DNA from: Octopus vulgaris
Taxonomy: Eukaryota
NCBI GenBank assembly: GCA_951406725.2
Contig: OX597819.1
Span: 86,118,001 to 86,182,000 of the forward strand
Reading direction: 5' to 3'
Length of the DNA: 64,000 bases
Shown here: positions 2,326 to 48,963 of the stretch, in pieces
Layout: each line of letters opens with the position of its first letter
Numbering within the stretch: the first letter of the stretch is position 1
Notes under the pieces: model-generated
The model's database searches: none
What the model saw: the letters and a program-made list of their open reading frames with translations, nothing else
Told to the model about the DNA's origin: nothing
Program-made: the position numbers and the translations under genes

Positions 2326-2539
2326 ATATATATATATATGTAAATGAATGAATGAATTATCCTTTGTTTACCGTTAACATGGAAAATTCAATAAACAGTT
2401 ACCAGGGTAGCAAAATTCACGCAAGTAACACTTATGAAGCGACCTATTCAAAGGTAGAAACTCCGGGTTAACGTGCAGTAATTTGTGTTGTATAAGTAAA
2501 TAAATGGAGTTGAACGCAGATGTTGTTAAAATTCAATTA

Positions 2540-2622
2540 CTTTCGACAAATATTTCGAAGACAGCATTGGTTTTATTCCAAAGGAATAAACGATGTAAAA
2601 TGGAATCTTCTCATCAGGAAAG
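2540..2622 (-). ncRNA. Type I hammerhead ribozyme, copy A (variant stem III)
   Basis: Minus strand: CTTTC-CTGATGA-GAAGA..TCTTC-GAAA-TATTT-GTC-GAAAG. Stem I and stem II are each 5 bp and the core is intact. Confidence 0.7.
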
Positions 2623-2644
2623 CAAGAGAGCCTATCTATTTACT

Positions 2645-10398: not shown

Positions 10399-10526
<128 letters not shown>

Positions 10527-16589: not shown

Positions 16590-16790
16590 TCATAGCACGC
16601 CGAGCAAAATGCTTAGTAGCATTTCATCCGTCTTTACATTCGGAGTTTAAATTCCGCCGAAGTCGAGGTTGCCTTTCACCCTTTTGTGATCAATAAAATA
16701 AATGCCAGTTGATTGCTAGGGTCGACGTGAACGACTTACGCCCTTCTCCGAAATTTCTGACCTTGTGCCAAAATTTGAAGCCAATATTTT
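16590..16790 (+). mobile_element. SINE (family with aaattccgccgaggtcgactttgcctttcatcc body)
   Basis: Homologous to copies near 17150, 18520, 20925, 25990, 27740, 33540, 53240 and 54495. Confidence 0.75.
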
Positions 16791-16832
16791 GTTAAAGAGA
16801 CACATTTATATTAGTGGAGCATTTATACTTAC

Positions 16833-16954
16833 TTGGTATCCTTGGACAACCCCTTTCATGTCTGCATGCGTATCAGGTACTGGGGTCCACAATACAGTAA
16901 CAGCAGTGCCATTGTATGTAACCACGTTAACATTATCTGGAACCACGGTAGGCA
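16833..16954 (-). CDS. CNTN: Contactin-like exon (start of FN3 repeat 3); absent from the ORF track on this strand
   Basis: Acceptor ttccatttttag| and donor |gtaagt; 122 nt, phase 1 to 0. Encodes (M)PTVVPDNVNVVTYNGTAVTVLWTPVPDTHADMKGVVQGYQ; the junction gives SAEG-M-PT. Confidence 0.9.
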
Positions 16955-17147
16955 CTAAAAATGGAAATTTATTCTATAATAACTTTGTCATCACGTTTTA
17001 TCTTCGTATTCTCATTCTCGTAATAGTTAAAATCTGTTCAAACAATATATAATAATTTTTATTATTTCAATGTTCAATCGTAAAAGAAACATTTTATTAA
17101 CAGTAATAAAGGACTCCTCGCCAAAGAGAATATTTTAAAGTATCAGT

Positions 17148-29814: not shown

Positions 29815-29904
29815 CTTTTTCCATCGAAGATATTTGTCACTCGTTCGTCGCCAATACACATTGTAGCCTATTCCTTTGCCACCTTGTTCAGTGGGTAAGA
29901 GAGC
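29815..29904 (-). CDS. CNTN: Contactin-like exon (middle of FN3 repeat 2); absent from the ORF track
   Basis: Acceptor tttttctttttcag| and donor |gtaggt; 90 nt, phase 0 to 0. Encodes ALLPTEQGGKGIGYNVYWRRTSDKYLRWKK. Confidence 0.9.
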
Positions 29905-29966
29905 CTGAAAAAGAAAAATTCTTTGTCATTGCGGAATAGAAAATTTACCTTTTTGTTCTGCTAATA

Positions 29967-31224
29967 CAACGTGTTCAAAAAGTCTCTCCGCAGTGAATAT
30001 TTTTCCTCCTGCGCAAGCGTAACTGGGCTATCACTGCGTGGGCAGCCTGGTGTCTGCTATTGTCCCTCAGTCATTGTGTACCCTTCAGCGGGTCGACATG
30101 CTAACCATTGAAGAATGTACGTTTTTAGTTGAATGGGTGTTTCGAGCTGGGAACAAATACACACATACTGTGAAATAGAAGTTCAGTGAAACTTTTCCAA
30201 ATACGTGTCACTGTGCGCGATTTGATTAGAAAATTTAGAAACATAGGCTCAGTGGAAGACGCAGAAAGAAGTGGTAGTCCTACTGTTCTTTCAGACGAAA
30301 CACTCTCCAATATTTCCAATAAGCCTGTCACCGTCCGTACGCAAACTGTCACAGGAAACGAATATCAGCCTAGGAAGTGCTTACATGGCAGTAAAAAAGA
30401 AATTGAATTTCTTTCCGTACAAAGTACTGGCCATTCAAGAATTGAAGACTACAGATCATGCTAAAAGGCTTCATTATTGTCATTTGTTCCAAAACTTTGT
30501 TGCCGAAAAAGGCATAGAAGTACTGGATTGGATAGGTATTTTACACCAATGAGGCTTGGTTTCATCTGTCGGGGCACATAAATTCGCAAAACACAAGGTT
30601 ATGGAGCACTGAGAATCCACACGCGACGCATGAGCAACCTTTGCATCCCGAAAAAGTTGGAGTATGGATAGCAATTTCGAGAAAGTGTATTGTGGGACTG
30701 ATATTTTTTGAAGACACCATCAACACCGAAAGATATTGCTCGAATATTGTCTATCCATTTGTAGGCCAACTCACTGAAAGTGAAAATATTAATGCATACT
30801 TTCAGCAAGATGGAGCTACAGCACATACTTCACGCATTACCATGGTGCTACTTCAAGAGCTTTTAAGTGAACTGATTATTTCGAAGGGACTTTGGCCACC
30901 AAGATCACCTGATTTAACACCGCCAGACTTTTTTTTCTTGGGAGCACGTAAAGGATCAGTGTACAAGAATCGCCCGAAAACCATTAATGAGCTAGAAGAC
31001 GCAATCGTAACCTTCACACGATCCATACTGCGTCAAACTCTCCAAGATGTATTTCAGGACATGTGTAGAAGAGTCAACTTATGCATTGAAAATGAAAGAC
31101 GACACTTTCAAGTTTTTTTAAAGTCTTGTAAAGTCTAATATATTCTTTTGTAGTCCTATACCATCTTATAAATATTTATTTTGCAATAAAATACTTACAG
31201 CGGAGAGGCTTTTTGAACACCCTG
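29967..31224 (+). mobile_element. Full-length mariner-like DNA transposon (rosa-like), frameshifted
   Basis: 28-bp imperfect TIRs (CAACGTGTTCAAAAAGTCTCTCCGCAGT) with TA on both flanks; transposase motifs QQDGATAHT and WPPRSPDLTPPD across several frames. Confidence 0.88.
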
Positions 31225-33195
31225 TACATATTACAGAAATTTTATTCATGTTACCTGACAGATTGTTTAATATATTCTTGTATTTTTAAAATTGTTTTAC
31301 GTCTTTCAGTCATTTGACTGCAGCCATGCTGGAGCACCACCATAAAGGGTTTTAGTCGAAAAAATCGACCCCAAGACTTATTCTTTCTAATCCTAATACT
31401 TATTTTATTGGTCTCTTAGGGCTAAACCGCTAAGTTACGAGTATGTAAACACACATGCCATCACATGGAATCCAGACATGTGTACCACGAGTAGGCATTG
31501 CCAGTAATGTACATATGCCTATATTAAATGCAGTTCCTGACAAACAATTTTGCATTTACTGCCAAAAGAGGGAAAAATTAAATCTAATCTATTCTAAAAC
31601 TACCCATTGTATATTACTATGTTGACAAAAGATATTCGAAAAGGACCTCTTTTCCCCACCCCCTTTCTGCCTGACGCAAACAATCTATAGGCAGCATCCT
31701 ACATAAAAGTGAAGTTGGAGACAAATTCTATGGGAAGATATGTACGTGTGTTCTTCTCTCGTCTAGACCACCTCAAGTTGTAAACATTAGATGATAAAGC
31801 GCTAGAAACACCAAAGGTGTGATACTGGTGTACTAAAGGAACTGATATGAGATTGGAGTTAGTAAATATGTACTATGTCAAATCTGCTGACGGGAAATCG
31901 ATTAATAACACTAACGTCAAAGTTAGATATAGAATTATAAATAATTGAAATAGACTGAACACAAACTTATAAGGAAGAATGGTCGTATATAAAAGGACAA
32001 AATACAAAAAAAAAATACCTTATAAATCAAATTTACAAATAAATGGAAAATAAAGAAACAAAACGTACAAAACTTCTGATACTATGACAGAAAATGACTT
32101 CCAAAAGATGTGCTATTATGTTTGTACTCACGTCACGGAAGTGCGACGCCGCAGAAATTCTTAAAAAACAAACAAATGAAATGTAATATATTATTTTCAA
32201 TGTAATCTTAAATGACATCGCTAGTCTCTAGATCAATGAAATGCGAAAATTCCTTTTTATCGTATTTTATCCGTAATAAGTATTTCATTGATCCGGAATC
32301 AAGGAATATATTTGGTAAAAACTTCTGACCTCAACATACACCTAGACTTTATTTTTGCGTATTTATGAACCCCGAAAAATATCCCTTCAACATTTATATA
32401 TTCTATTGTTAGACGAATCGAAACAATGTTTTCTCAATATATTAGGATGTGTAAGATGAAAATGTGAAATATAAATTCCTTTAAATTTCATTTGAACTTG
32501 AACAACCATACATGCAATAAATTTTGGAAGTTTTTCATCTCTAAAAAATTGCTTCGTATTGTTAATTGGGATTCATCTCTAACACTCCAGAGTTCATAGT
32601 TTCGGGTTCTATATCAATATTTTAGTAAACATATTCAGAATGACCAACGGATAAATGCCAAGCCAGCTTGTGCCATACAGTTAACAAATAAAATTAAATA
32701 TTTTGTTTATATTCAACATTATTTATTTGGTATAGAAACATAAAGTTGTTTTAAATAGAAATAGACGCAGTTTTTAAGTTTCAACTCCAAACATAAAATT
32801 TATAAGTAGTAGCAAACGAATAGCTCTTGGCGGTTTTCTTTTAGTTTATATTTTCGTATTTTTATATACGTTGAACAACAGTCTCCAGCGTGTCTTTTTC
32901 TCACGAGCTTAACTTAGCTTCTATTTATAACAGCTTGAGTTTCTGGATTTTGTAAATGTTTTTTTTTATGCTTTACTAATGGAAGGTGAGATGTGTGATA
33001 TCACACATCTATCTAACCATCAATCTACGCACACATACACACAGACATTCACAAACAAACGCACGCGCGCATATATATGTGTATGTGTGTGTGTCAGTAT
33101 ATATAGGAGGGGCGTATGAAAAGTTCTGAGCCTTGAAGTCTCAAAGGCCTTGAAGTCTTGTACTATGTTTTGCTTTTTAGACGCTCGATTTTTCA

Positions 33196-33262
<67 letters not shown>

Positions 33263-33305
33263 AAATTCAAAATGCGATAAAATAAAATAAATTATTTTCG
33301 CTGGT

Positions 33306-33344
<39 letters not shown>

Positions 33345-33391
33345 TATGTAAATAAATGGAGTTGAACGAAGGTGTTATTCAAATTCTTTTA

Positions 33392-33475
33392 CTTTCGACA
33401 TGTTTCGAAGACAACATTGGTTATATTCCAAAGGAATAAACGGTGTAAAATAATGTAATCTTCTCATCAGGAAAG
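33392..33475 (-). ncRNA. Type I hammerhead ribozyme, copy B (canonical core, palindromic ACATGT stem III)
   Basis: Minus strand: CTTTC-CTGATGA-GAAGA..TCTTC-GAAAC-AT-GTC|GAAAG. All core nucleotides and the GUC site are present. Confidence 0.82.
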
Positions 33476-33902
33476 AAAGAGAACCTATCTCAACAAAAAT
33501 ACATTATAACAATTTTGATGACTGCATAAATGATAAACAGAACGCTATTAAGTATTTTTGGTCTTATTACTGATCCCGAAAGGATAAAAGGCAAAGTCAG
33601 CCTCGGTGGCATTTGAACTTGGAACTTAAAGTCGGAAGAAATGCGGCTAAGTATTGTGTTTGGCGTGCTAACGTTCCTGTCAGCTCGGTCCCTTCGACGG
33701 GCCCAGAGATAATGATGCTTGTATATGACCATCTAATATGCCAGAAGTAGCAGCTAAACATCCCTCCAATCACGCGTTACCGTCTAAAAATATGAATGTG
33801 GCATGAATCCAGGATAAGGTAGTCCTTTTAAGCATTATACCTGATACAAGTACAAGAGGATCACGGTTTAGACGTCTTGACCAGATATGACCTGGAGCTA
33901 CA

Positions 33903-33959
33903 ACTCCTCCTCCTCCTCCTCCTCCACCACCACCACCACCACCACCGACGCCGACGCCG

Positions 33960-34055
<96 letters not shown>
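33903..34055. repeat. Compound trinucleotide array (CTC)n(CAC)n(CGA/CGC)(TAC)n(TGC)n
   Basis: Read directly from the sequence. Confidence 0.95.
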
Positions 34056-34281
34056 ACATTAAAAAATTACACGCAATGAACAAAAAATTGTATATGATTT
34101 ATTCTATGATTGTATTAAATATTTTAAATGTTATTTCTTTTATGTTTAAAGTTGTTGGTGTATAGCCCCAGGTCAGCTTTGATCGAGCAGACAAACATGT
34201 TAACTCATCCAAAGAATTGGTCATTGAAAGGTCAGCGATTTCAGTAAAATTACCCACTACCCTTTTCAAATACTATTGATT

Positions 34282-34640
34282 TTCTTTTACTTGTTTCAGT
34301 CATAGAAGTGCGGGCCATGCTGGAGCACCGCCTTGAAGGGTTTCATTAAACAAGTCGACCATAGTATGGTTCTTAGTCTCTTCTACTGAACTGCAAAATT
34401 ACGGAGACGTAAACAAACCAAAACCAGTTGTCAAAGGGTGGTGGGGGACAAACACACACACACACACACACACACGTATACGATGGGCTTCCACACAATT
34501 TCCGTTTCCCAAATTCACTCAGCAGGCATTGGTCGACCCGGGGCTATAGTAGAAGACACACGTCCTATGTAGATACAGCGCTGTGTGACTAAACCCGAAA
34601 GAGCATGGTTACAAAGTGAGCTTCTTAACTACATTGCAAT
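34282..34640 (-). mobile_element. Near-complete tRNA-SINE with internal (CA)n
   Basis: The head near 34640 resembles the 4286-4436 copy; the tail ttttacttgtttcagtcat..ccatgctggagcaccgcc is also present at about 17670 and 31300. Confidence 0.7.
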
Positions 34641-35059
34641 GCTTGCGCCGAAGTAGATCTCGGCGTGATTTGAAATCAGAATGTGAAGAGCTCCATGAAA
34701 TAAATGCTTCTAAGCATTTTGTACAATTTGCAAACGCTTCTGTCGGCTCATCCATTTTTGCAAAGTTAATAAAAATTTCGATACATCCTTTATACACTTA
34801 GTGACTAATAATAAGTAGAGAACAAATAAAGGAGAAACATAGAGGGATATATTGGTTGAAAAAATGTTCAAAGGCTTAGAAGTAGATTCCTCTACTGAAG
34901 TAAAGTGCAAGGTGAACTAAATGTTCAAGCTATACAGACTGGTAAAAATCACTTATATGAGCTAAAGGTGCTTACATTTGTAAGATCACTCTATAAGTGT
35001 GTTAACAAGGTGATTCTTAGAGAAGAGAATATGGAAGAGTTCAGAGTTGCAAATGTTAC

Positions 35060-35880
35060 AAAATCATTTGCCCTTGTCATAAGGGAAAGAGATGGAGAGG
35101 ATGAACCAATCTAACTTAAAATACAATAAGGATTTTAAGTTAGATTGGTTCATCCTAGATATCTCCCCTGTGTATGTGATGTTCATGTCTTCACAAGCAC
35201 CTTCTATGCATCTTATGCTGTAAACTACATTCCTAGTTCTACAGTTAATTCCAGGGCTAATCCTACATACCATGCAGTTATCATTGGTGCATATGGTATT
35301 CTCAAAGTGGTACGTCGTACATAGTTGTGATCTGACGGATTTCCCTGGCTTTTCAACAATCTTAATGTTGAGTTTGGTCTCATTCAGAGGTTTCCTAAAT
35401 CTACGGGTTAGTTCTCTATGGGCTGTGGCCTGTCAGTTTTATACCACGTGTTCACCTTGTTTCCTTTGTTACAAGTTCTTTGTATCCTATTCCAGTCTTT
35501 GTTTCAATATTTAGGGCAGGTACCACTGGTATCATTGCATATAATGTTAGCTAATTTCTTTCTAGCTTTCCCCTCACCCGTATACTCGAACCCTATCTTT
35601 CTGATCATATCCAGAGAATTGCATACGGTGCATGAAGTTCTGTACGTGTTTTTTCGTTTCATAGTAGGGACACGTTGTTCATTATCCTAGCTAAATCTAC
35701 TATCAGTATGTTAATTTTCATGTTGTGTGACAAAGCTGAGTTCTTGTGAAAAACATATTTTGAAGCTATAGGTTTCATGTAATAGGAGTGGAGGAACTGC
35801 ACTCTATTGTTCACAGTTTCTAACCAAAGTTCAGTATCAAGGACGGGGTGTCTATTGTTGTGGGGCTTAAACAAACATTA
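35060..35880 (-). mobile_element. Penelope-like element remnant (RT thumb plus GIY-YIG)
   Basis: HSYYMKPIASKYVFHKNSALS and CRTRNVVYSIRC...YTGEISR. Confidence 0.75.
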
Positions 35881-36295
35881 TTGCAAATTGTAAAGAGCAG
35901 AAACAATATAGAGAATCAAATAATACTTCTTAATGTTTCATGTTTAAAGTGATTTCGTTTGGAGTATATTATCTTGCAACAATATAAGAAGTTCAAATGC
36001 TGGAAGTTTCAGTAGTCTTCCTTATATAAATTGAAAACCATTTATCCACAGTTAGCGTTATTCATATGACTAGCACCAAATTCCAAAGTATGAAAAATAA
36101 GGTATATGATGATTGTAGTTTTCAATAAGCACTTATATAAAGAATGAAAAAAATTCCATAAAGTGGTAAAGTTTAAAATGGAATCTTTACATGAGTGGAG
36201 AATGCCCCATGAGACTGAGAATACTTGTGTTTTGTTTCTGAGATTAAGCTTTCAAGTAGGTTGGGTATTATTTATGAGTGCACATAAACGATGTA

Positions 36296-36721
36296 CCGTA
36301 TTTGACGGCATATTAGACGCACTGGCATATTAGACTCACCCTTATTTCAGCAGGTCAAATTCAGGAAAAAAGTTTTAAGTGTATTTAAGCATATATTGTT
36401 GAGAGCAGTCTAGCAGTACATTACAAAAGCAGAAAACATTGCTGTATAAAAGCAAGCACACAAAAGGAAAGCATACAAATTACAATAGTAATCATCTTTA
36501 ATCATCTTTTTAACCAGAAAACTCTTCATCATCTTCTACACCAGAAAAGTCTTCATCATCTTCAAAACAAGGAACAACTTCATCACTACTGCTGAAATCA
36601 CTGTCTTCAAATAATGCATCATCTTCTGTGCCATCAAGGGCATTGCTAATGCCACACTTCTTAAAAGCCTTCACAATGATTTCAGGCCTAACATCATCCC
36701 AAGATTTCTTCACCCACTCAC
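36296..36721 (-). mobile_element. pogo/Tigger-type transposon 3' end
   Basis: [33 protein letters not shown] plus an acidic tail; TIR-like TA|CCGTATTTGACGGCATATTAGACGCAC; broken by a (TA)n tract. Confidence 0.8.
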
Positions 36722-36938
<217 letters not shown>

Positions 36939-36990
36939 ACTATATATAAATATATATATAAATATATATATATATATAACTATATATAAA

Positions 36991-37342
36991 GGGTAAAGAC
37001 CCCCTTCGGTCATGAATGACCATGGGATTGCACCTAGAAAGTTACCCTCCTAGACACAAGTCCGGGCAAGGTTGTTTATGGAAGACCAGCAGTCGCCCAT
37101 GCATACCAGCCTCCCCTCTCCACGCCACCAGTGTTATCCAAGGGAAAGACAAAGGTCGATATAGCTTGGCACCTGTGACGTCGCAACTCATTTCTACAGC
37201 TGAGTGAACTGGAGCAACGTGAAAATAAAGTGCTTTGCTCAAGAACACAACACGCAGCCCGGACCAGGATTCGAGCTCACATCCTCACGATCGTAAGCTC
37301 GACGCTCTAGCCACTGAGCCATGCGCCTTCACGGCTAGAGAT
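36991..37342 (-). mobile_element. tRNA-derived SINE inside a (TA)n tract
   Basis: A-box TGGCTCAGTGG and B-box-like GCTCGAATCC; TATAACTATATATAAA at 36975-36990 and 37343-37358 may be a TSD. Confidence 0.8.
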
Positions 37343-37348
37343 TATAAC

Positions 37349-37380
<32 letters not shown>

Positions 37381-37396
37381 AATATATATATATAAC

Positions 37397-37480
<84 letters not shown>

Positions 37481-37483
<3 letters not shown>

Positions 37484-40400
37484 TTTGATACTTTGATAGG
37501 TTTCGGCCATTATTGGCCCAGGCCATGTCTAACTTAATAGCACCACCTGGTGAAGTCTTTCAAGTCAGAATTTGGGCACTATGGCCCACTCAAGTAGAGA
37601 GTTATTGTTTACAGAGACATATCCGGGTGTAGGGGGTTTATCCGGGATTTCTTGAAGGAATCTGTCCAAAGACTTCTTGAACCCTATAGGGTCAGTTTCT
37701 GTTTTAATGTGTTTTGGTGTAATGTTAAAGAGAGCGGGGCCAATTGAGGTGAAATAATTGTGCCGTATTGTTGTTATGAGATGAGAGTGCGATTTTTGTT
37801 TTGGGCGGATGGCACGGGGCCCAAGCCTTGGATGGACCTTAAAGGTGATGCCAACATCATTTGGGCAATGCTGATGGAATATTTTCCACAACATGCAGAT
37901 GATGTAGCGCTCACGACGACGTTGGAGAGAATAAAGTTTTAGCTTTTCTAGTCGACCCCAATAGTCGAGGCCTGTCATGCCATCTATCTTTTTTGTGATT
38001 GCCCTTTGAGGTGCTTCAACTTTTATGATACTTTGTTTTGTGTGGGGAAACCACAGTGGACAACAGTATTCAAGGTGGGGTCGGGCATAAGTGGAGAAGA
38101 GAAGGATAATGGTGTGGATATCTCTCGACTGGAAAGTTCTGAGAATTCAGGAACACATTCTGCGGGCCATGTCAACTTTGGTGTTTATATGAGTGGCCCA
38201 GCTTATGTTGTTGTCCACAATTACTCCCAGGTCTCTGATGTTGTTGGATGCCACGAGAGTTTCACCTGAAGGAAGGGAGTATGGGAGTTTCAGGGCATCC
38301 TCTTTTCCAAAGTGGATTAACTCAAATTTATCCTCGTTCAGCAGCATATTGTTTTTTTCTGCTCATTGGATAACAGCCAGTAGATCTGATTGAAGGCATG
38401 TCCGGTCACTCGCCTCATTTATGACCTTCTGTAGCTTGGAATCATCTGCAAAGATTTTTATGTTGCTGTGCTTGATGATGTCATTAATGTCATTAATGTA
38501 GATGATGAAAAGAAGTGGGCCCAGCACAGTGCCTTGCGGAACGCCACTACTGACTTTGGCTGGGCTTGATTTTACCCCTTCAACTACAACGCGTTGAGAT
38601 CTGTCTGTCAGGAAACACTTGATCCATTTCAGTAACTTTCCAGAGACACCAATGTTGGATAGTTTTTTCAATAGGATCTTGTGATCAACCCTGTCGAAGG
38701 CCTTACTGAAATCAAGGTAGATGACATCGGTGTTGGAGCCCTCTCCCAAAGCTCTCAAAATGTCATCAAAGTGATGCAGGAGCTGCGTTAGGCAGTCCCT
38801 TCCATTACGGAACCCATGTTGGTTAGAGATCAGCCGTCTGTTGCTTTCCAGAAATTGCGTTATTCGAGATCTCACCACCCTCTCAAATACCTTGATGATA
38901 TGAGAGGTGAGTGAGATCGGACATTAGTTCACTGCAAGGGACTTGTTTCCCTTTTTGAAAACTGGGACAACAGACTGGGACAGAAGGTTTTTTGGAATAT
39001 AGCCAGCATCCAGTGAGTTTCTCCACAGATTAGCAAGGGGAGATGCAAGTTGGTGTCGACACACCTTCAGGACACAAGCAGGGAACCTATCGGGCCTACT
39101 GCTGAATTGTGTTTTATTTCGTTTATCGCCGCTAAGACATCAGGGGCACTAAACGTTATGTCCGATATAGTGTGTTGGGGGTTGACATCACTGATACAGC
39201 CCAGATCGGCCATATCAGGATTGCTGAAAACAGAGCAGTATTGTTTCTGCAGTATCTCGGCCATGGATTTGGCATTATCTTGGAGAGTGCCAGTTTCATC
39301 AATTAGAGGGCCAACAATGGAGACAGTGACCCTGCGCTTCCTCACAAATGAAAAGAACACTTTGGGGTTGAGTTTGATTTTTTCAATGGCCCACTTCTCC
39401 TCAGCTGATCTTTGGTTATTGATGAGGGTCTTCATGCATTGTTGGAGGTTATATTTTATGGATTCAAGCAGTGCGATAGCCGTCGAATGTGTGTGTTGCT
39501 GTTGGCAGTACTTTAGTTTGTTAATTTTTTTGTTTGTTCTTTTTATTTTTCTGATAATAGTTTTTCTGTTTTGGGGGATTCTGCACTTTTTGTTCACAGG
39601 TCTTGGTGGGGAGTGTTTCGCACATATGTCTGTGACGGTGTCTACAAAAATCTGCCAAGATGTTTTATGGTTGGTGGAGATGTGTGTATGTGTAAAGGAC
39701 CAGTCAACATGTGATAGCTCGTTCCTGATTGCATCCCAGTTGGCATTATGGAGATCCATGTTATCAAATGGGTGGGCTGGAGGGAGGTCACTAGGATTAG
39801 CTTTCGGCTGGTGGAATTTCATGTTACAGAGAACCATGTCATGGTCTGAAAGAAGGGTTTTTTCCACTGTAACGTTATGTATAGTGTTAGTGTGGCTACT
39901 AAACACTAGGTCCAAAATGTTCTTCTGATGTGTTGTTGGTGCAAGGACAAGTTGGAACAAGAAAAACTCATTCGTAAAGTCGAAAAGTGACTCTGCTGCT
40001 TCTTTGTCAGCGGTTGAGGCGGGAGTGCTTGGTTTCAAACAGTTTGTAGTCCAGTCAACACAGGGTAGATTGAAGTCTTCCATCATGAGTAGGTTCCTAG
40101 AATGGCACTGTTGAATAAAGCACTTAATGCTGTTGAGGCATTCTTTAAAGCACAGTATGGGTGTTTGGGGCGGCCTATAGAGCCCAATTACTGTCAGGTC
40201 ATTGGCTTTGTTGTGCACGGTGACTGATTCACAGTAGCCGTTGGAGAATATACTATTTCCATCTGCCGTAAACCAATCATGCAGGAAAATGGCAGTTCCA
40301 CCCTTCCTTCTGCCGATACGATCCGCGCGGATGGTTGTGAAATTCTTCACTCTCACTTCGGCTTCCAAGTGGGAGTTGTCAAGGTGGGTCTCAGTGAGAA

Positions 40401-41870
40401 TGAAGAAAGGGATGTGGTGTGGATGGTTACCAACCCAGTCTTCAATGAATTGGACCTTCCATTTTTGTGCATTGATGGAAGGGCTGACACCTTGTGCATT
40501 GAGTAGAAATGTGGAGGTTAGTGTAGTGGCTGGTTTTGACTGTTGCAGGGGGCTTGGATTTTTTGTGTGTGTTAGTGGCAGCAATGTGGGGAATTGGTGC
40601 ACTGGGGTAATAGCATAGGATTGTGTTGAGTGATGGCTAGAATATTTTTGTGTATCTCTTTTGCCATGTTCAACATGGCTAAAAAAGAATTTTCCTGCTT
40701 AGGGAGCAGTTTTTGGCTGGAGGTGTGGTTGCACTGTTGGATAGGGTTGTAGTTTCCACTTTTGTTGTTGTTGTTTTTGTGTCTTCCTGAAAAGACTGGA
40801 CCAGCATTACTGCAGCATGGTGTGTTTTTATTTTTATTTTTATTCAGGTTTGTGTGTTGGCTTGAAGCCCCGTTCTGTTTGTGCGTCGGGTCCCTGGAAG
40901 ATGAGTGAAGGGACAGTCACTCAGCAGACATATTCTCTCACGTTGGGAATACCGGCAGATTTTAGGACTCCGAGTTGTGTGTGTTTTGAATTTCGATTTA
41001 CTATTTGGTGGTGTTGATGTTATTGTGGGATGCGTGCTTTGGCCTTGGCCGGTAGTGCGTCTAGTGCTAGGTAGATGTGTGAAGATGAGGTCACTATTTG
41101 TGCAGAGTCTCTGACGCAGTGAATAACGGCATATTTTGGGGTTTCTTGTTTGTGCCGTGGGGGGCGCATTCTGCTTCATATGTTTCTTTAAGTTTTTGTT
41201 ACTGCAGTACTATTGAGGTGGTGATGTGGGGGAAGAGAGCAGTGGTTTCTTATTTGGTTTTTTGTTGGTATTTTGGGTGATAGAAGACGATGGTGGCAGC
41301 GGTGGTGATGATGATAATTGTGGTGGTTGCCGTGAGAGCGGTGAAAAGATACTGGCATTTAGTGAATCATCTAGTATGCTAGAGTTGAGGAGTGGTTGTT
41401 GTTGTTGTTGTTGTTGTGCTTGACCGATGTTAGGGTCAGCTATTGTGCTGGGAACTAGGAGTGGCTCATTCTGTTGTTGTTGTTGTTGTGGCTGTTGTTG
41501 ATTTTCTAGCTGTTGCTGTTCTTGAACAGTGAAAATATAAAGAAGTTTTTCAAAATGGCTTTTTGTTAGTTTGAAAGAAGCTTCGATATGCTTCAGTTTG
41601 CTACGAATCTGTTTGACGGATCGTGTGTTGATTATTTGTGATGTTTTTTCGGCAATCTCATTCAAACATAAAACATTTAAATTTTCTGTTTGGGAAAGAG
41701 AGAACCAAGTGTTTATTAAAACATCAATTTCATTATCAGACCAATTTCGTCTGTTCAGTTGTTGTTGTTGTTGTGGCTGTTGTTGATTTTCTAGCTGTTG
41801 CTGTTCTTGAACAGTGAAAATATAAAGAAGTTTTTCAAAATGGCTTTTTGTTAGTTTGAAAGAAGCTTTA
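37481..41870 (-). mobile_element. Near full-length CR1-like LINE (ORF1, APE endonuclease, RT), frameshifted
   Basis: APE (ETHL, GLYRPP, ILDLVF, SDH), RT (YLDFSKAFDRVDH, SGVPQGTVLGPLLF, IFADD), C-terminal YSLQRRRERY, and a 3' octamer repeat (TATCAAAG)2. Confidence 0.9.
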
Positions 41871-42119
41871 AAAGAAAAACAAGTGTATATAACAATTTGT
41901 AGTTAAATAAAAACGTACTTACGGGTTTGTAGGCAAATACGTGGTTACAAATATATATATATGTAAGGTCAGTTAAGTTTTGAAGCTGTGTAGCTTGCTA
42001 CTGACTTGGGAGAGAGAAACAAAAACACGTCCGTCCAGTTCAACAGAGGCACTATATATATATAAATATATATATATATACATATACATATATATATACA
42101 TATACATATATATATATAC

Positions 42120-42175
<56 letters not shown>

Positions 42176-42732
42176 ATATACATATATATATGTTAATAAA
42201 ATATATATATATATAAACATATATGTACTCCTACTTCTACATGTACATATACAGTATATTGTACGGACACCAAAGGACGTCGAACACATGAGAGATAAAA
42301 ACATAGACACAAACCAAGGAATATAGACAAGCAAAAAAAGGAGATACAGGACAATAAGCACAACGAAAAATCCTCTTCAGTCGCTAAAGTTTCATCTACT
42401 AAACGTTTCAAAGGATAAAAGCGATACGTATACTTCGAATGAAAATTCTTTGCAAAAGCAAATCAATTAAAATTCTGAGATCTTGTCGCAGAGGGAAAAA
42501 AAACAAGACGTAACGACAGTACAAACATATAAACAGTAAAAATATATATATAAATATAAAAATATATATACATATACAGGACATATAGAACAAGATAAGA
42601 AGGTATATATATACAAACATATATATATATATATATATATATATGTCGACCAGTATAGAAGGCAGGTAGAAAAGATATAGCAGTTATACGGAAGTTCGTC
42701 GCAGATGGACATATAGAAATAGACATATACAT

Positions 42733-42821
<89 letters not shown>

Positions 42822-42829
42822 TATGTAAA

Positions 42830-43100
42830 GGCGCGTGGCTTAGTGGTTAGGAGCATTCGGCTCATGATCGTGAGTTCAATTCCCGGCGGCGCGTTGTTTC
42901 CTTGAACTAGACGCTTTATTTCACGTTGCTCCAGTCCACTCAGCTGGCAAAAATGAGTAGTACCTGTATTTCAAATGTACACGTGTTTGTGTACACGTGT
43001 TTGTGGAGTGCTCAGCCACTTGTACGTTAATTTCACGAGCAGCCGTTCCGTTGATCGTATCAGCTGGGACCCTTGTCGTCGCAACCGACGGAGTGCTCGA
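42830..43100 (+). mobile_element. tRNA-derived SINE (mosaic head and tail)
   Basis: A-box TGGCTTAGTGG and B-box GAGTTCAATTCC; the core is shared with the 36991 SINE and the tail with the 4441 SINE. Confidence 0.8.
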
Positions 43101-43151
43101 CCACATATATATATATATGTACATATATATATATATGTACATATATATATA

Positions 43152-44769
43152 CAGTTGCGGCCAAAATGTTCGGAACGGCATTGTTTTTGTCAGAAAAGTA
43201 GGTATAAGTTTTTATCAAAGTTGTTTTATATTCTATAATTTTCACAGACAATAAATACGATATAATTGGTATTGTCTGAGATTTTGGTGTAATTTGAGTG
43301 GATAATACAAAAGTTATGGATGATCTAGTGATTTACTGCAAAAGCCAAGGCGGCCAAAATGATCAGAACGGTTGAAAAAATAACAAAATAATCAAAAGGT
43401 GACAGAGAATGCTGGAATTATTTCATATTTAGTGTGAAGCCCTTTAGCTTCAATCAAGGTTTGACATTTTCGACTGCATGGGTAAATGAAATTTTCAATT
43501 TCTTGCTGGGTGATCTTATTCCATTCTTCCTGAAGAGCATTCCATAACTGCTCGGTTGTTTTAGGATTTCTGGCTTTCAAACGTTCTCCTAGAATATTCC
43601 ACACATTTTCAATAGGATTGAGGTCTGGGCTTTGAGCAGGCCAATCCATAACAATAACCTTTTCAGCCTTGAGGAAGTTTATGACCACCTTAGCCTTGTG
43701 ACATGGGGCATTGTCCTGCATGAATATGGGTGGTCGCTTAGTTGAATTTCTCAGCACAGGCAAGACATGATCTTTTACAAGTTGTTTATAAACTCCTGCA
43801 TTTATCTTTCCATGTAATCGCTGCAAAGGGCCCACAACATCTCAAGATATCTCCCCCCACAAACCATGACACTTCCTCCACCGAATTTAACACTAGTCTT
43901 AAGGCATTTAGGTGACAATTTTTCTCCTGCTTTTCGACGAACGTACCTTTTCCCATCTGAGCCAAATAACATAGACTTAGATTCATCACTGAAATGCACC
44001 GTTTGCCATTTTTCTTGAGACCACAACACATGTTCGGTTGCAACGACACTTTTTATTCTTGGAGCTAATCAGTGGCTTCACTGCAGGTGCTCTTGCTTGT
44101 AGGTCATGTTCAACTAAAGGACGAGACACAGTTTTTCGAGATAAAGTTTTCTTCAGTACAATGCTCATTTCCCGAAAAACAGCAGCAGCAGTTTTAAATC
44201 TGTCCTTTTTAACCAACTTTACCAGAGCACGATTTTCTCTCTTGGTCGTTTTTCGTGGCCTACCTGTAGACTTTCTTGCTTCACGCGAACCACAATCATC
44301 GTAGACCTTAGGAATACCGTGAACAATACTTTTTGACTTGTTAACGATCTTTGCAATAGACCTAATACATAAATTATCCTTCATTCGAAGCTTAATAATC
44401 TGCCGACGAATTGGTAACGGAGTAAGTGGCATTATATTAACAAAGTACACTGCAGATATTCTTACTAATGTCTAGTAAACGAACTGTCACGTAAACAAAT
44501 TCAAAACAGAGTTCGACGGGTTAAATATACTAAAACATGGAGTAAAAGCAACCGTTTTGATCATTTTGGCCGCCGTGGGTTTTGCAGTAAATCACTAAAT
44601 CATCCATAACTTTTGTATTATCCTCTCAAATTACACGAAAATCTCAGACAATAACAAATAATATTTTATTTATTGTCTGTGAGAATTATAGAATATAAAA
44701 CAACTTTAATAAAAACTTATACCTACTTTTCTGACGAAAACAATGCCGTTCTGAACATTTTGGCCGCAA

Positions 44770-44772
<3 letters not shown>
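43152..44772 (-). mobile_element. Tc1 DD34E transposon with IR/DR-type long TIRs, copy 1 (two frameshifts)
   Basis: Termini CAGTTGCGGCCAAAATGTTC with TA flanks; TIRs of about 225 bp; SDES / QDNAPCH / SPDLNPIE. Confidence 0.93.
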
Positions 44773-44830
<58 letters not shown>

Positions 44831-44864
44831 TGTATGTATGTATGTATGTATGTATGTATGTATA

Positions 44865-45200
44865 TAACCAGAGTGCATAAGGTATTTGAGGATATATAAC
44901 AGATAATAACTTTAATGATCAAAAAATGCCATGAGGATAAAAGTAAACCTTCTCTATAACGTTATTCAGTAAACCCACCTTCTATACGAGATCTAAATCA
45001 TCTACATGCTCGGATCAAGTGGCCCTGGTTCATTTTGTACATTACTCTGACTATTGCAGCTTTCAAAGAATCTTTGGGTTATGGGCGTGTTCATTGACCT
45101 CTCTCAACAACGCTTGACGTGTAATAGTCCAATAGATTGACATCTGAGGAATTAGGAGGCCAAATGTTAAGGGTCGTGTGATCATAACGCCACAAAAATT
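44865..45200 (-). mobile_element. Mariner/maT-like transposase 3' remnant
   Basis: The minus strand gives WPPNSSDVNLLDYY...SLKAAIVRVM...LIRAC. Confidence 0.6.
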
Positions 45201-46426
45201 GAACCTAAATGGTTCAATTATCCCTATAATCTACTCCCACCTTATAGTCCCGTCCGAAAAAGTGATTCACGAGGACGTTACGTCTGAGACGTGAAGGGTT
45301 TCTGTAGCTTTGAGTGGGGGAGTTTTGTCTTGTGGTGAAGGGTGTATTGCAATTTCCTCAAAAAACAACCAGATACAACAGACGTAATTAAAAAAACTTT
45401 AGTAACCGTCTTTCACGCAGCTTTCGAAACTGCAACTCCAAATCACCATACAATAACACTAGACACCAGTTGCTGGCGTCCCCTAACTCTAGAACAATGA
45501 AATTTGCCTCCGATCCAAACCAAACTTCAATAAATACAACAAAATGACCCTTTAAAAGAATCAGCCAACTGTAACGGCTGATGAACGTTCTCCAAATGGA
45601 TGTCAACCAGGCAGACCGACAAACGTGACCATCGGAAAAATAAGACGTCATCAGTACTTTAACGAATCAAAAAGCAGATCCGTTCACGGAAAAAAATTAT
45701 AAATATACTGGATTCCAAAATGACGCCGTTACAAGCAAAATTCCCTGCACACGATAGAAAAAGAATCACAGAAACTGTAACAAAACACATTTTACTATCT
45801 TCATTTCTCCATTGTTTTTCTCCCTCTTAATTCAGTATGACCGAACCTTTGGTGATCCACATTTCTTCTCGATTACTTCTAACACTATTGAATTTTGTGC
45901 ATTTAAACAAGATGATCCACATTTTTTATATTATTGATATTATTGAATGTTATGAACGTTTAAATCATATGTGATATTATTGAGTCTTGACTCAGAATGA
46001 TCGAAACTTTGAAGGCCCACATTTCTTATCGCCACTTTTAACACTATTGAATTTTGCGCATTTAAACAAGATGATCCACATCTTTATATTATTGAATGCT
46101 CTGAACATTTAAGTCATATTTGATATTATTGTATCTTGTAAGCGTTAAATATTTTAATGAACTTCTTAAACTTTTTTATATTTTCCCAAGATTTTCCCTT
46201 GTAAACTGTTCTTAACATGTTCTTATTATCAAAGAATGTATTTATATATTGTAATACTTTGTGACAACCAGTACCTAACACAACCAAGCTTTTACATGTT
46301 ACTTTTGACAATCTTTTTCTAATAAAGTGAAACCGGCCTAGTAAATAAACATCTTTTAAAATTGCATTTTCAAACCTTCTTTCATATATATATTTATAGA
46401 ATAATAAAGAGAACGTTCTTGGTAAA

Positions 46427-46478
<52 letters not shown>

Positions 46479-46479
46479 A

Positions 46480-48345
46480 TACAATATGTTACATTACTCG
46501 GTAGTCAAGATAAAACTCTGAGTTTCAGATGCCGAAGTGGAAATCCACAACACCATCTCTTCGGTTATCTGGCTATTTGAAAACGTTATGAAAAAATACC
46601 GTTAAAAATGAAGGGAAATTACTCTGTTATAACTCTGCTTTGCCTGCGTACTTATACATCACTCGCATTTTTCGTCATAAAAATTATATAAAAATACATA
46701 AAAATATATAAAAATATATAAAATCTTCTTGGGACATAACACAGAAAGCATGTTCTATCCGTTTTCTTTAGGGGACCAAAAACGTAACAGAAATTTAGTC
46801 ACATGTGGGCATGATCCGAAAAGCTCTGTCCTTGTATTTAGACATGTGGTAGGGTCTAAGCTGCTTTTCCAGATAAGCCATCTCTCCATGTCGCATAAAC
46901 CGCACCTTCCGCTGCCGTTAGTGTAGGGCTTACATCTGGCCAAAATCTTCCATTGTATGTTATAATCGACACCTTTATCTCTTAAAGACCAAATATGATT
47001 GGATAATTGTGTCGCTTTTCTTTTGTTCCAGTGCCTAAAGCTCAAAGTGTGGTTATTGAACCTGGCCTTGAAATTACCCTCTGTCAGGTCCACGTATTTC
47101 TTCGTCGAAACGGTGTCTTTAGTGGTTATAGAGTTTACGGTAGCTTCATATATGATGGTCTTGGACATGCAAGCTCCATTTAGCGGGCACAATTCTTTAT
47201 TCCTGCATGAACAGCTGTTTTCTTCTTGTGTTTTTTGTATGTTATGATTGATTATGTTTTTAAAATTGGTAGTTGAACTAAAACTAATTTTTAAATTGTG
47301 TCTATTGAAGAGTTTCCTATAAGCATGGTTAACTGGAAAATGTCTATCTATCAGTGCTAGGAAATATTTACCTATATTGAAGGCCACCTCGGGTGAGTAA
47401 GGGGGCGTAAACCAGATGACCTTCCTATTTCTATTATTCCTTTTCCTTACTGTTGGGCTGGTGATAGGTGTATATTTTATTTTTTCGCTAAAACCACTAT
47501 CTTTTAAAGCTTTATTATAAACTGGGGCAACGCTATTGAAGATGTCCTCATTAGATGAGAGGCTAGAAATCCTCTTACTAATATTTTTAACTAAATTTTT
47601 GAATACTATAGGGGGATGGCATGAACCTACATTAATATAACTTAGTCTATCATTGGGCTTCCTATAAGGCTTATAAATATTATTATTAAGATCTAAGGAA
47701 ACGTCTAAGAAATTGACAACCGTCAGGTTAGTGTCTATAGTTATACTAAGTCCGAAGTGTTTCATTAACTGGATAATATCCTTCCTAAAACGATCTTGTG
47801 CTGGTCCATTTGTATTAGCTGTTAAGGCGAGGGCATCATCTTTGTAGATGGCGAAATGTACGTTAGGGAATGTCTTACCGAAGGTATCTAGGAGAAAGAG
47901 TCCAATTAGATCACAGATGCCTGTCCCATCATATGAACCCATGCTCACATCGAAAGCGCCCTCCGTGTCGGTGTTTTTTACCCACTTTGCATTCTCACTG
48001 AAAAGTAATGTCTTTCTAGCATGGAAAATTATATCCTTATCATTGGTACTAATTTCTATGAAGTCACTAGCGAAGATTAGGGCTTTATCTAGCAGTTCTT
48101 TAGAGATAGAGGCATAAAAATCAACAATATCGAATTGTGTAAACCTCGCTTTTTTCTTATTCTTAATAGCTTTAAACCAGTCTACGACTTCTATACTATT
48201 GGACCATTGCACTAGCCTAGTATCGGTCTTAATTTTCGTATTTATTTTATCTAAAATTTCTTTGCTAATAATCCCTAGTTCTGACTTGGCTGGGTTGATA
48301 AGCCTACATTTAGGGTTGGAACATAATATTGAGGTCTCTTTCTTT
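46480..48345 (-). mobile_element. 5'-truncated Penelope-like element (RT plus GIY-YIG) with an uninterrupted frame of about 530 aa and 3' flank
   Basis: CRLINPAKSELG, FDIVDFYASI, MGSYDG, YKDD, WFTPPY, CSCRNKELCPLNGAC, IIYEATV..YVD. Confidence 0.9.
46508..46570 (-). ncRNA. Atypical hammerhead-like motif in the 3' flank of the Penelope-like element
   Basis: AGATAA-CCGAAGA-GATG..CATC-T-GAAACTC-A-GAGT-T|TTATCT; stems I, II and III all pair. Confidence 0.5.
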
Positions 48346-48368
48346 CTTTTGTTATCTTACCGTTTTAT

Positions 48369-48405
<37 letters not shown>

Positions 48406-48427
48406 CTCAAACACACACGCGTACGTA

Positions 48428-48481
<54 letters not shown>

Positions 48482-48868
48482 AACAAATATATATGTACAT
48501 ACACCTGCGAAAACAAACATATATATCATAGCTAAATGTATAGACATATACAACAAATTTCTACATGTTCTCTGTGTATGAAACTTCACCCAGATGGCTG
48601 AGGGAACAATAGAAAATATTTCACCAATGAAAAATGCAGTGACGTGGCAGCGAATACACCATCTCAACCATAATGTTTGGGAGTTGTTTTTTCTGTTAAA
48701 TAACAACTCGAAAACTTCAAAATATGACTATTTCTGTAATATTACTGATATTGACTCTTTTTTTTATGAAAGAAATGCACAGTTTCAAAACCTAATTTGT
48801 TTTCTTTTATTATTTCGGTGCAATATTTACTAATATCCAAATTATGAGAAGAGAAAGAATTTACTTAC

Positions 48869-48963
48869 TTCCCAAGAAATGTGTAGTTGGCCAACTTTGC
48901 CACCCCCGCCTCCAACCAACTTTGGAGCCGCTTGAGGATTAGAAGGGTCCATTTTATGAAACC
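48869..48963 (-). CDS. CNTN: Contactin-like exon (start of FN3 repeat 2, GGGGGKVG motif); absent from the ORF track
   Basis: Acceptor gtattttttag| and donor |gtaagt; 95 nt, phase 1 to 0. Encodes (R)FHKMDPSNPQAAPKLVGGGGGKVGQLHISWE; the glycine-run GGGGGKxG is characteristic of contactin FN3-2. Confidence 0.92.

What the first reader, a model, noticed from the sequence alone, without database searches (positions are those of the whole stretch)
33392..33475. Canonical hammerhead ribozyme on the sense strand of a contactin intron
Seen: the minus strand reads CTTTC-CTGATGA-GAAGA[loop]TCTTC-GAAAC-AT-GTC|GAAAG. Every core nucleotide (CUGAUGA, GAAA, GUC) is present. Stem I is 5 bp, stem II is 5 bp and extends (ACATT/AATGT) to an apical TATTCC-TTT-GGAATA hairpin, and stem III is the palindrome ACATGT. 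Predicted cleavage is between 33397 and 33396. Established: minimal type I hammerheads with palindromic stem III are typical of Penelope-like elements and cleave best as dimers. Inference: here the motif lies in a ~145-bp ORF-less unit (33348-33490) next to a (TA)n tract, on the strand of the contactin pre-mRNA, so the 19-kb intron could self-cleave. The long structured stem II is unusual for minimal hammerheads and may supply tertiary contacts for monomeric activity.
Basis: partly seen in the sequence, partly recalled or inferred. Interest (0 to 1): 0.82.

Follow-up and report, generated by a model that had tools for sequence, protein, structure and literature searches.

The report
Penelope-like retrotransposon hammerhead in contactin intron
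The hammerhead ribozyme motif is real, but it is the standard ribozyme of a very abundant Penelope-like retrotransposon, a broken copy of which landed in a contactin-like gene's intron, so it is ordinary and probably does not cut the pre-mRNA.

Summary
On the minus strand, 33475..33392 reads CUUUC-CUGAUGA-[57-nt helix II]-GAAA-CAUGUC|GAAAG, with cleavage predicted between 33397 and 33396. A general minimal type I hammerhead descriptor finds 2 hits in the window against 0.03 per shuffled window.

It is not a 145-bp stand-alone unit. It lies in the 3' terminal region of a 5'-truncated Penelope-like element (PLE) of the Hydra type. [quoted passage not shown] The copy is inserted in (TA)n and split by about 1.24 kb of foreign DNA (33348-33560 plus 34807-35122).

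The family is very abundant in this 2.8-Gb genome: the exact 22-mer around the cleavage site occurs 731 times. It forms tandem and inverted arrays. Across subfamilies the core is conserved and the stems covary.

The gene context is also confirmed. The motif is on the sense strand of an 18,964-nt GT..AG intron of a contactin-like gene.

Helix III is only a palindrome (ACAUGU here, ACAUAUGU in the family consensus), so a monomer cannot form it. Published PLE hammerheads are inactive as monomers and weak as dimers. Intron self-cleavage is therefore unlikely and is untested. The long helix II is a conserved trait of this lineage; its proposed tertiary-contact role has no support.

Verdict: a new member of a known kind, of low interest.

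The parts
33392..33475 (-). Minimal type I hammerhead ribozyme motif. Stem I CUUUC/GAAAG (33475-33471 with 33396-33392); core CUGAUGA 33470-33464; helix II 33463-33407; GAAA 33406-33403; helix III palindrome ACAUGU 33403-33398; C17 at 33397; predicted cleavage between 33397 and 33396.
   Evidence: Covariation across subfamilies. Core conservation.
33407..33463 (-). Extended helix II (57 nt): a 6-bp base including G10.1-C11.1, a U/U mismatch, a 5-bp middle helix, an A/C-rich internal loop, and an apical UUAUUCC/GGAAUA hairpin.
   Evidence: The same architecture is found in subfamilies A-F of this genome with compensatory changes. Relatives from other samples have short helices II.
33348..33560 (-). 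3' terminal piece of a Hydra-type Penelope-like element, ending at the family's usual terminus ...CTCCATTTATTTAC. It differs from the family's 211-nt 3' consensus by 4 mismatches and one 2-nt indel (about 2%).
33306..33347 (.). (TA)n microsatellite abutting the element's 3' end. This is the preferred target of this PLE type.
   Evidence: The same junction is seen in other copies. (TA)n preference of Hydra-clade PLEs is described in PMC8557442.
33561..34806 (.). About 1.24 kb of unrelated DNA (SINE-like sequence and (CAG)n/(GTA)n/(GGT)n/(GGA)n runs) that splits the PLE copy and replaces about 60 nt of it.
34807..35122 (-). Upstream piece of the same PLE copy: the C-terminal end of the GIY-YIG-like endonuclease ORF (from ...FKLDWFILSISFPYDKGK), the stop codon and the proximal 3' UTR. 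The 5' truncation point is at about 35122.
35112..35156 (+). A 45-bp inverted duplicate of the element's own sequence at the 5' truncation point.
29905..48868 (-). Intron of 18,964 nt (GTAAGT...TTTCAG) in a contactin-like gene. The hammerhead lies inside it in sense orientation.
48869..48952 (-). Upstream FN3 exon (approximate 5' limit) ending ...HISWE|gtaagt.
29815..29904 (-). Downstream FN3 exon: cag|ALLPTEQGGKGIGYNVYWRRTSDKYLRWKK|gtaggt.
2341..2637 (-). Second, older copy (about 8% diverged) of the same PLE 3' end, in a downstream intron of the same gene. Its hammerhead is at 2540-2622, with an intact CUGAUGA/GAAA core, C15.2 changed to U and a broken palindrome (AUAUUUGU).

Best explanation
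The motif is the hammerhead ribozyme that every copy of a very abundant Penelope-like retrotransposon (PLE) family of this genome carries in its 3' region or pseudo-LTR.

The family is of the 'Hydra' type. [quoted passage not shown]

How it is inferred to work in the element: tandem units are transcribed together. Two ribozymes pair through their palindromic helix III (ACAUAUGU) into a double hammerhead, and this may cut the multimeric RNA into units. This step is inferred from published work on PLE hammerheads and was not shown here.

The window copy is a young (about 2% diverged), 5'-truncated, interrupted and therefore dead insertion. It happens to lie in sense orientation in a 19-kb intron of a contactin-like gene. 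As a lone monomer with a 6-nt palindrome it cannot build helix III. It is most likely a passenger with little or no effect on the pre-mRNA.
For: Shown here:
- The sequence has the complete core plus stems I and II.
- The 143-bp stretch has at least 1,991 first-look candidates; the 40 scored matches are 94-97% identical. The 22-mer spanning stem II, GAAA, helix III, the cleavage site and stem I occurs 731 times, and the window's own variant 29 times, against 0 for reversed controls.
- Copies extend upstream into an ORF ending in a GIY-YIG-like domain and show variable 5' truncation.
- Intact ORFs of up to 899 aa exist, in tandem with a period of 3,624-3,625 bp and with one hammerhead between consecutive ORFs.
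- Inverted head-to-head copies are common.
- An AlphaFold model of the window's own related ORF (46758-48356, pLDDT 88) matches only reverse transcriptases in the PDB, including telomerase, at E around 1e-7.
- The protein family's consensus carries the diagnostic Hydra-clade motifs RWK, DKT, CxCX5C, CxxC-E-N-CxH, and no CCHH (compared with PMC8557442 section 11).
- Across subfamilies the core is invariant and the stems covary: 95.9% of cells paired against 30-48% for slid controls, and 5 pairs with double-sided changes against 1.1 in shuffles.
- Core positions change 7.5-fold less than flanks in 41 copies (p=1.6e-4).
- RNAcofold of the family consensus gives the double hammerhead with an 8-bp intermolecular helix III as the minimum-energy dimer.

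From the literature:
- PLE hammerheads sit in pseudo-LTRs and have a short helix I, a large helix II and a palindromic helix III. They show no monomer cleavage and weak dimer cleavage (PMC4209133; PMC6765202).
- In an Anolis PLE, hammerhead mutants do not affect insertion, and RNA-seq shows no ends at the cleavage site (PMC11167929).
Against: - No cleavage assay or RNA data could be consulted, so activity of this copy is not excluded. Its core is intact and the copy is young.
- Transcripts of hundreds of sister copies could in principle supply a dimer partner in trans.
- All four Hydra-type PLE fragments in the window, and one other PLE fragment, are sense to the gene. If anything this argues that sense copies are tolerated, but the sample is too small to judge.
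- Rfam hammerhead models do not score the motif.
- The endonuclease domain is assigned from motifs and predicted secondary structure only.
Confidence: 0.85

Rival explanations
1. The intronic hammerhead is active in place. It would cut the nascent contactin-like pre-mRNA, either as a monomer helped by the long helix II or as a dimer with transcripts of sister copies, and so lower or modulate gene output.
For: - The core is intact, the strand is sense, and the copy is young.
- Hundreds of potential trans partners carry ACAUAUGU or ACAUGU.
- The helix II architecture is conserved between active subfamilies.
Against:
- The only partner in the same transcript is 31 kb away and has a broken palindrome.
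- Stem I is an open 5-bp helix with no loop or bulge to receive a tertiary contact.
- PLE minimal hammerheads show no monomer activity and low dimer activity in vitro (PMC4209133), and an Anolis PLE shows no RNA ends at its cleavage site in vivo (PMC11167929).
- Several sense-oriented copies are tolerated in this one gene.
Confidence: 0.07
2. It is a metazoan retrozyme: a short non-autonomous tandem repeat with a hammerhead that makes small circular RNAs.
For: - Type I hammerheads of animals are often in such repeats (PMC7229834).
- Retrozymes derive from PLE pseudo-LTRs (bioRxiv 10.64898/2026.07.22.740005).
Against: - There is no same-orientation tandem partner in the window.
- The repeat is contiguous with the PLE ORF in many copies.
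- Close pairs elsewhere in the genome are inverted, not direct.
Confidence: 0.03
3. In this PLE family the hammerhead-shaped RNA, and especially its long conserved helix II, serves mainly as a protein-binding or reverse-transcription-initiation signal near the 3' end rather than as a nuclease.
For: - Genomic copies never end at the cleavage site. They end about 55 nt or about 245 nt downstream of it, both at ...CCATTTA.
- In an Anolis PLE, reverse transcription starts internally downstream of the hammerhead, and hammerhead mutants still insert (PMC11167929).
- Helix II pairing is kept across subfamilies.
Against: - The catalytic core is the most conserved part, which is what selection for cleavage predicts.
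- No binding data exist.
Confidence: 0.05

Closest known systems
Minimal hammerhead ribozymes of Penelope-like elements (Cervera & de la Pena 2014, PMC4209133; Lunse, Weinberg & Breaker 2017, cited in PMC6765202)
   Same: - Type I topology.
- An open, short (5-bp) helix I without a loop.
- An enlarged helix II.
- Helix III reduced to a palindrome that can only pair in a dimer.
- Location in the pseudo-LTR or 3' region of an RT plus GIY-YIG element.
- Thousands of mostly solitary copies from truncated elements.
- Inverted pairs 100-700 bp apart.
- Consensus families with covariation.
   Different: - Helix II is far longer (53-58 nt with two internal loops, against 7-8 bp).
- There is no unpaired nucleotide between A9 and G10.1.
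- The host element is of the divergent Hydra type, not Penelope/Poseidon/Neptune.
- Cleavage was not tested here.
Hydra clade of C-terminal EN+ Penelope-like elements (Craig et al. 2021, PMC8557442)
   Same: - A single ORF with the DKT and RWK motifs.
[quoted passage not shown]
- Insertion into (TA)n.
- Hammerhead present.
- An RT too divergent for Pfam RVT_1.
   Different: - It was described mainly from cnidarians, with only 'a small number' of mollusc families, and as generally <3 kb. Here the unit is about 3.6 kb with an ORF of up to 899 aa, and there are 10,000-17,000 first-look candidate copies in one genome.
- In the youngest subfamily the linker cysteines and the RWK motif are degenerate.
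- No phylogeny was made.
Conserved intronic hammerheads of amniotes (cited in PMC4209133 as De la Pena & Garcia-Robles 2010a) and the CPEB3 HDV-like ribozyme (bioRxiv 10.1101/2022.09.22.508989); the comparison rests partly on my own knowledge
   Same: A self-cleaving ribozyme motif on the sense strand of a large intron of a neural gene.
   Different: Those are single-copy, conserved between species, and fold as stable monomers with tertiary contacts. This one is one of hundreds of young transposon copies with a helix III that forms only in a dimer.

Membership tests
Hammerhead ribozyme (general) | Conserved core C3 U4 G5 A6 N7 G8 A9 / G12 A13 A14 / A15.1-U16.1 / H17 | tested here: met
   CUGAUGA, GAAA, U16.1 and C17 are all present. 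The core is invariant across subfamilies except N7 and H17.
Hammerhead ribozyme (general) | Three helices around the core, with a G10.1-C11.1 closing pair | tested here: inconclusive
   Helix I (5 bp) and helix II (with G10.1-C11.1) are present and covary. Helix III exists only as a 6-nt (window) or 8-nt (family) palindrome that pairs in a dimer. The window monomer cannot form it.
Hammerhead ribozyme (general) | Site-specific self-cleavage 3' of position 17 | not testable with these tools
   No biochemical or RNA-end data are available.
Rfam hammerhead families (Hammerhead_1 and relatives) | A score at or near the family covariance model's gathering threshold | tested here: not met
   There is no hammerhead hit at gathering threshold or at E<=10, either in the window or in four sister loci. 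The likely cause is the 57-nt helix II and the minimal helix III.
PLE minimal hammerhead (Cervera & de la Pena 2014) | Located in the pseudo-LTR or flank of an element encoding RT plus GIY-YIG endonuclease, with tandem or inverted arrangements | tested here: met
   The RT fold is shown.
PLE minimal hammerhead (Cervera & de la Pena 2014) | Short open helix I (4-5 bp), larger helix II, palindromic 15.2-16.2 and loop 3 | tested here: met
PLE minimal hammerhead (Cervera & de la Pena 2014) | An unpaired nucleotide between A9 and G10.1 | tested here: not met
   A9 is followed directly by G10.1, which pairs with C11.1.
Hydra-clade PLE (Craig et al. 2021) | DKT and RWK motifs, CxCX5C linker, GIY-YIG without CCHH, CxxC and CxH around the conserved E and N | tested here: met
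   All are present in the consensus of 26 homologues. All except the DKT/RWK region, which is missing because the ORF is 5'-truncated, are present in the window's own ORF at 46758-48356. The youngest subfamily ORF has DKT, CNLC-E-N-CPH and no CCHH, but RWL in place of RWK and a degenerate linker.
Hydra-clade PLE (Craig et al. 2021) | Phylogenetic placement of the RT within the Hydra clade | not tested
Hydra-clade PLE (Craig et al. 2021) | Insertion into (TA)n | tested here: met
Metazoan non-LTR retrozyme | Head-to-tail tandem repeats of a short ORF-less unit, each with a hammerhead | tested here: not met
   The unit continues into a PLE ORF.

The most novel reading that the evidence does not exclude
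The 53-58-nt helix II, whose architecture is conserved and covaries in every subfamily of this cephalopod-type PLE lineage but is absent from related Hydra-type elements elsewhere, is a functional add-on. It might be a built-in stabiliser or a protein-binding arm. It would let the ribozyme act without the usual loop-loop contacts, so that the many sense-oriented intronic copies, including this one in a neural adhesion gene, cut host pre-mRNAs at a measurable level.
Probability: 0.06. Interest if true: 0.6.

Novelty: new member of a known kind. Interest (0 to 1): 0.22.

Why it matters
The finding mainly matters for annotation.
- A whole, very abundant hammerhead family in a large invertebrate genome (probably an octopod) is invisible to Rfam models, and its host element is invisible to Pfam. 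Such motifs will keep turning up as apparent 'intronic ribozymes'.
- Tying the motif to a Hydra-type Penelope-like element removes the need for a gene-regulatory explanation.
- It adds a lineage with an unusually long, conserved helix II to the known range of PLE hammerheads.
- It suggests that Hydra-type PLEs are much more abundant in this genome than the few mollusc families reported so far.

If sense intronic copies did cleave, thousands of host transcripts would be affected. Current evidence speaks against this.

Tried and rejected
- Rfam at gathering and at E<=10, on the window and on four sister loci, gave only microsatellite-driven microRNA false positives and no hammerhead.
The second found only one site because the second copy reads GAAAU.
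- I built a covariance model R1, but the genome cannot be searched with a model. I used exact patterns and a small sample of loci instead.
- Pfam found nothing for the 899-aa, 833-aa, 785-aa and 533-aa ORFs or for 26 homologues.
- PDB sequence and profile searches found no RT.
- A single-sequence AlphaFold model was useless (pLDDT 34). The alignment-based model worked.
- My first core-versus-flank count was biased, because copies had been picked with a regex that required an intact 5' core. I repeated it with BLAST-defined copies.
- The Lunse et al. paper and the supplements of Craig et al. are not held.
- My strict descriptor found no hammerhead in five related contigs from other samples. By eye they carry CUGAUGA/CUGAAGA...GAAA motifs between ORFs, with an extra U before G12 and 9-nt quasi-palindromic helices III. 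I did not pursue this.
- Chance origin was rejected.
- A tRNA-derived SINE origin for the flanking insert was not supported by ARAGORN.

Full report
**1. The observation**

The minus strand of 33475..33392 reads CTTTC-CTGATGA-GAAGATTACATT...AATGTTGTCTTC-GAAA-CATGTC-GAAAG.
- All hammerhead core positions are present: C3-A9, G12-A14, A15.1, U16.1 and C17.
- Stem I is CUUUC/GAAAG.
- Helix II starts with the canonical G10.1-C11.1 pair. It runs for 57 nt: a 6-bp base, a U/U mismatch, ACAUU/AAUGU, an internal loop, and an apical UUAUUCC-UUU-GGAAUA hairpin.

I wrote a general minimal type I descriptor (core, stem I >=4 bp, stem II >=4 bp, U16.1, H17). It finds two sites in the 64-kb window, this one and 2540-2622, also on the minus strand. 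In 200 dinucleotide-preserving shuffles the mean was 0.03 hits, and none had the strict form with a palindromic helix III. Rfam does not score the motif at any threshold.

**2. What it belongs to**

The 143-bp stretch is a dispersed repeat of the window's genome (2.8 Gb, 227 contigs). It has at least 1,991 first-look candidates, and the 40 scored matches are 94-97% identical. The exact 22-mer TCTTCGAAACATATGTCGAAAG occurs 731 times and the window's shorter variant (ACATGT) 29 times. Reversed controls give 0.

- Upstream it extends for variable lengths, which is 5' truncation.
- Downstream it runs to one of two termini, about 55 nt or about 245 nt past the cleavage site. Both end in ...CCATTTA and are followed by (TA)n or (CA)n.
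- About 300 nt upstream of the ribozyme an ORF ends with SIYQC...YIGASS...R..NH...CNICNSE...CKH, a GIY-YIG-like domain.

Searching the genome with this peptide and with the upstream part of the ORF gives 16,966 and 10,496 first-look candidates. Open frames reach 899 aa. One array has three copies 3,624-3,625 bp apart, with one hammerhead between consecutive ORFs, about 250 nt before the next start codon. Inverted head-to-head copies are frequent.

**3. Identity of the host element**

Pfam and PDB sequence searches find nothing. The ORF nevertheless has RT-like motifs: FDIxSFYPSI, MGSxxSAQIADL and YRDD.

An AlphaFold model was made of the window's own related ORF (46758-48356 minus, 533 aa) using 89 homologues. 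It has pLDDT 88. In the PDB it matches only reverse transcriptases, at E around 1e-7: retron RTs, DRT2, DRT9, telomerase TERT and group II intron RTs.

The consensus of the homologues shows RWK, ADKT, CNCRxxxxC (that is, CxCX5C), a GIY...YIG core without cysteines, and CxLCLxEK...LNxR...CRH. These are the features Craig et al. list for the 'Hydra' clade of C-terminal-endonuclease Penelope-like elements, along with (TA)n insertion and the presence of hammerheads (PMC8557442 section 11). One homologue is named from Argonauta hians. Together with the genome size, this suggests an octopod host; I did not verify it.

**4. The window copy**

BLAST of family members against the window, the sequence itself and comparison with the family's 211-nt 3' consensus give this layout, read along the minus strand:
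- 35122 to 34807: the end of the endonuclease ORF, the stop codon and the proximal 3' UTR.
- 34806 to 33561: about 1.24 kb of unrelated DNA that replaces about 60 nt of the element.
- 33560 to 33348: the distal 3' region with the hammerhead, ending at the proximal family terminus and followed by (TA)n.

There is also a 45-bp inverted duplicate at the truncation point (35112-35156). The distal piece differs from the consensus by 4 mismatches and the 2-nt helix III indel over 211 nt, so the insertion is young.

A second, older copy (about 8% diverged) lies at 2341-2637. Its core is intact, but C15.2 is changed to U and the palindrome is broken.

**5. Gene context**

Minus-strand ORFs encode FN3 segments. 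Joined, they match the FN1-FN3 region of contactins as the twelve best PDB hits, with contactin-2 at E=9e-26.

The exon ending ...HISWE is followed by GTAAGT at 48868. The next exon is preceded by TTTCAG at 29905. The intron is therefore 18,964 nt long, and the hammerhead is on its sense strand.

**6. Is the ribozyme under selection?**

Subfamilies that differ widely in their flanks all keep CUGANGA, the base of helix II, GAAA, a palindromic helix III (ACAUAUGU, ACAUGU, ACACGUGU or ACAUGUGU) and a stem I that changes by compensation, for example CUUUC/GAAAG to UUUUC/GAGAA.

On a 23-sequence alignment, 95.9% of cells pair, against 30-48% when the partners are slid. Five pairs have changes on both sides, against 1.1 in shuffles (1 of 500 shuffles reached 5).

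Among 41 copies defined by BLAST, core positions carry 2 substitutions in 451 cells (0.44%), against 81 in 2,449 (3.3%) in the flanks (Fisher p=1.6e-4). Helix II as a whole changes at the flank rate, 3.7%. The signal most likely comes from selection on active source elements, not on dead copies.

**7. Mechanism**

In the window copy helix III would be A15.1-U16.1 and C15.2-G16.2 closing a 2-nt loop. That cannot form.

In the family consensus the minimum-energy homodimer is the classical double hammerhead with an 8-bp intermolecular helix III.

Published PLE hammerheads show no detectable monomer cleavage and only weak dimer or trimer cleavage (PMC4209133; PMC6765202). In an Anolis PLE, hammerhead mutants still insert, and RNA-seq shows no ends at the cleavage site (PMC11167929).

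The most likely role is therefore dimer-dependent processing of tandem PLE transcripts; this is inferred. The intronic copy is a passenger. The only other hammerhead in the same transcript is 31 kb away and has a helix III sequence that does not match. Dimerisation in trans with sister transcripts is conceivable but untested.

**8. The long helix II**

All subfamilies of this genome keep the same architecture: a base, a small mismatch, a 5-bp middle helix that covaries (ACAUU/AAUGU, CACAA/UUGUG, CAUUG/CAGUG), an A/C-rich internal loop and a UUAUUCC hairpin.

Hydra-type relatives from other samples have much shorter helices II. The long helix is thus a trait of this lineage and probably functional for the element.

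Nothing supports a tertiary contact with stem I, which is an open 5-bp helix with no loop or bulge.

**9. Verdict**

The motif is real and the annotation is correct in detail, and the gene context is right. It is, however, one of many hundreds of copies of a known kind of transposon-borne ribozyme, and the proposed self-cleaving intron is unlikely. The only new elements are the unusually long conserved helix II and the abundance of Hydra-type PLEs in this genome.

Noticed in passing
window 2341-2637 (-), hammerhead at 2540-2622: A second copy of the same PLE 3' end lies in a downstream intron of the same gene. It is 5'-truncated just 20 nt before the core. The core is intact, but GAAAC has become GAAAU and helix III is AUAUUUGU, which is not a palindrome.
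   Followed up: yes
window 46758-48356 (-), and about 46510-46575 (-): A 533-aa open frame of a different Hydra-type PLE (FTQFDIVDFYASI, IYKDD, CSCRNKELC, CGLC..E..N..CPH) lies in the same intron. Downstream is a hammerhead-like motif GATAA-CCGAAGA-G..CATC-T-GAAA-CTCAGAGT-T|TTATC, with U4 changed to C and an extra U before G12, followed by (TA)n.
   Followed up: partly
window 50500-50876 (-), 35157-35432 (-): There are further PLE fragments. One is a weak Hydra-type RT match at 50.5-50.9 kb. The other is a canonical-type PLE endonuclease piece (CTNDNCMVC linker, VVYSIRC...YTGE) directly upstream of the hammerhead-bearing copy. All PLE pieces in the window are on the gene's sense strand.
   Followed up: partly
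L001-L030 and L046 (genome loci), about 55 nt and about 245 nt downstream of the cleavage site: Copies of the family end at one of two alternative 3' termini, both ...CCATTTA, and never at the ribozyme cleavage site. This recalls the 'tail' and the two internal reverse-transcription start sites reported for an Anolis PLE (PMC11167929).
   Followed up: partly
L048-L052 (contigs of ENA assemblies ERZ27277065, ERZ27257412, ERZ27276946, ERZ27276943 and ERZ27276922): L048 and L050-L052, related Hydra-type elements from other samples, carry hammerhead-like motifs between tandem ORFs. They have short helices II, an extra U between helix II and G12, and 9-nt quasi-palindromic helices III (ACUACUAGU, AUAGACUAU). 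A strict descriptor misses them. I found no such motif in L049.
   Followed up: partly
window 37568-41902 (-): A long non-LTR retrotransposon lies in the same intron. It has a 543-aa ORF with an endonuclease-like N-terminus and RT motifs (YLDFSKAFDRVDH), preceded by a glutamine-rich ORF.
   Followed up: no
window 62029-63023 (-) and 43395-44471 (-): Two related transposase-like reading frames look like Tc1/mariner by eye, with the same peptide strings in both.
   Followed up: no
window 33900-34060: A compound trinucleotide microsatellite (CAG)n(GTA)n(GGT)n(GGA)n lies inside the DNA that interrupts the PLE copy.
   Followed up: no
G000:C1:119514500-119524499 (L046): A tandem array of three PLE units with a period of 3,624-3,625 bp. 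It has open frames of 899, 867 and 737 aa (the last is cut by the locus end), and the two ribozymes that lie within the locus are identical (CUGAAGA core, GUA cleavage triplet, ACACGUGU helix III). Dozens of loci gave the same BLAST score, which suggests very recent activity of that subfamily.
   Followed up: partly
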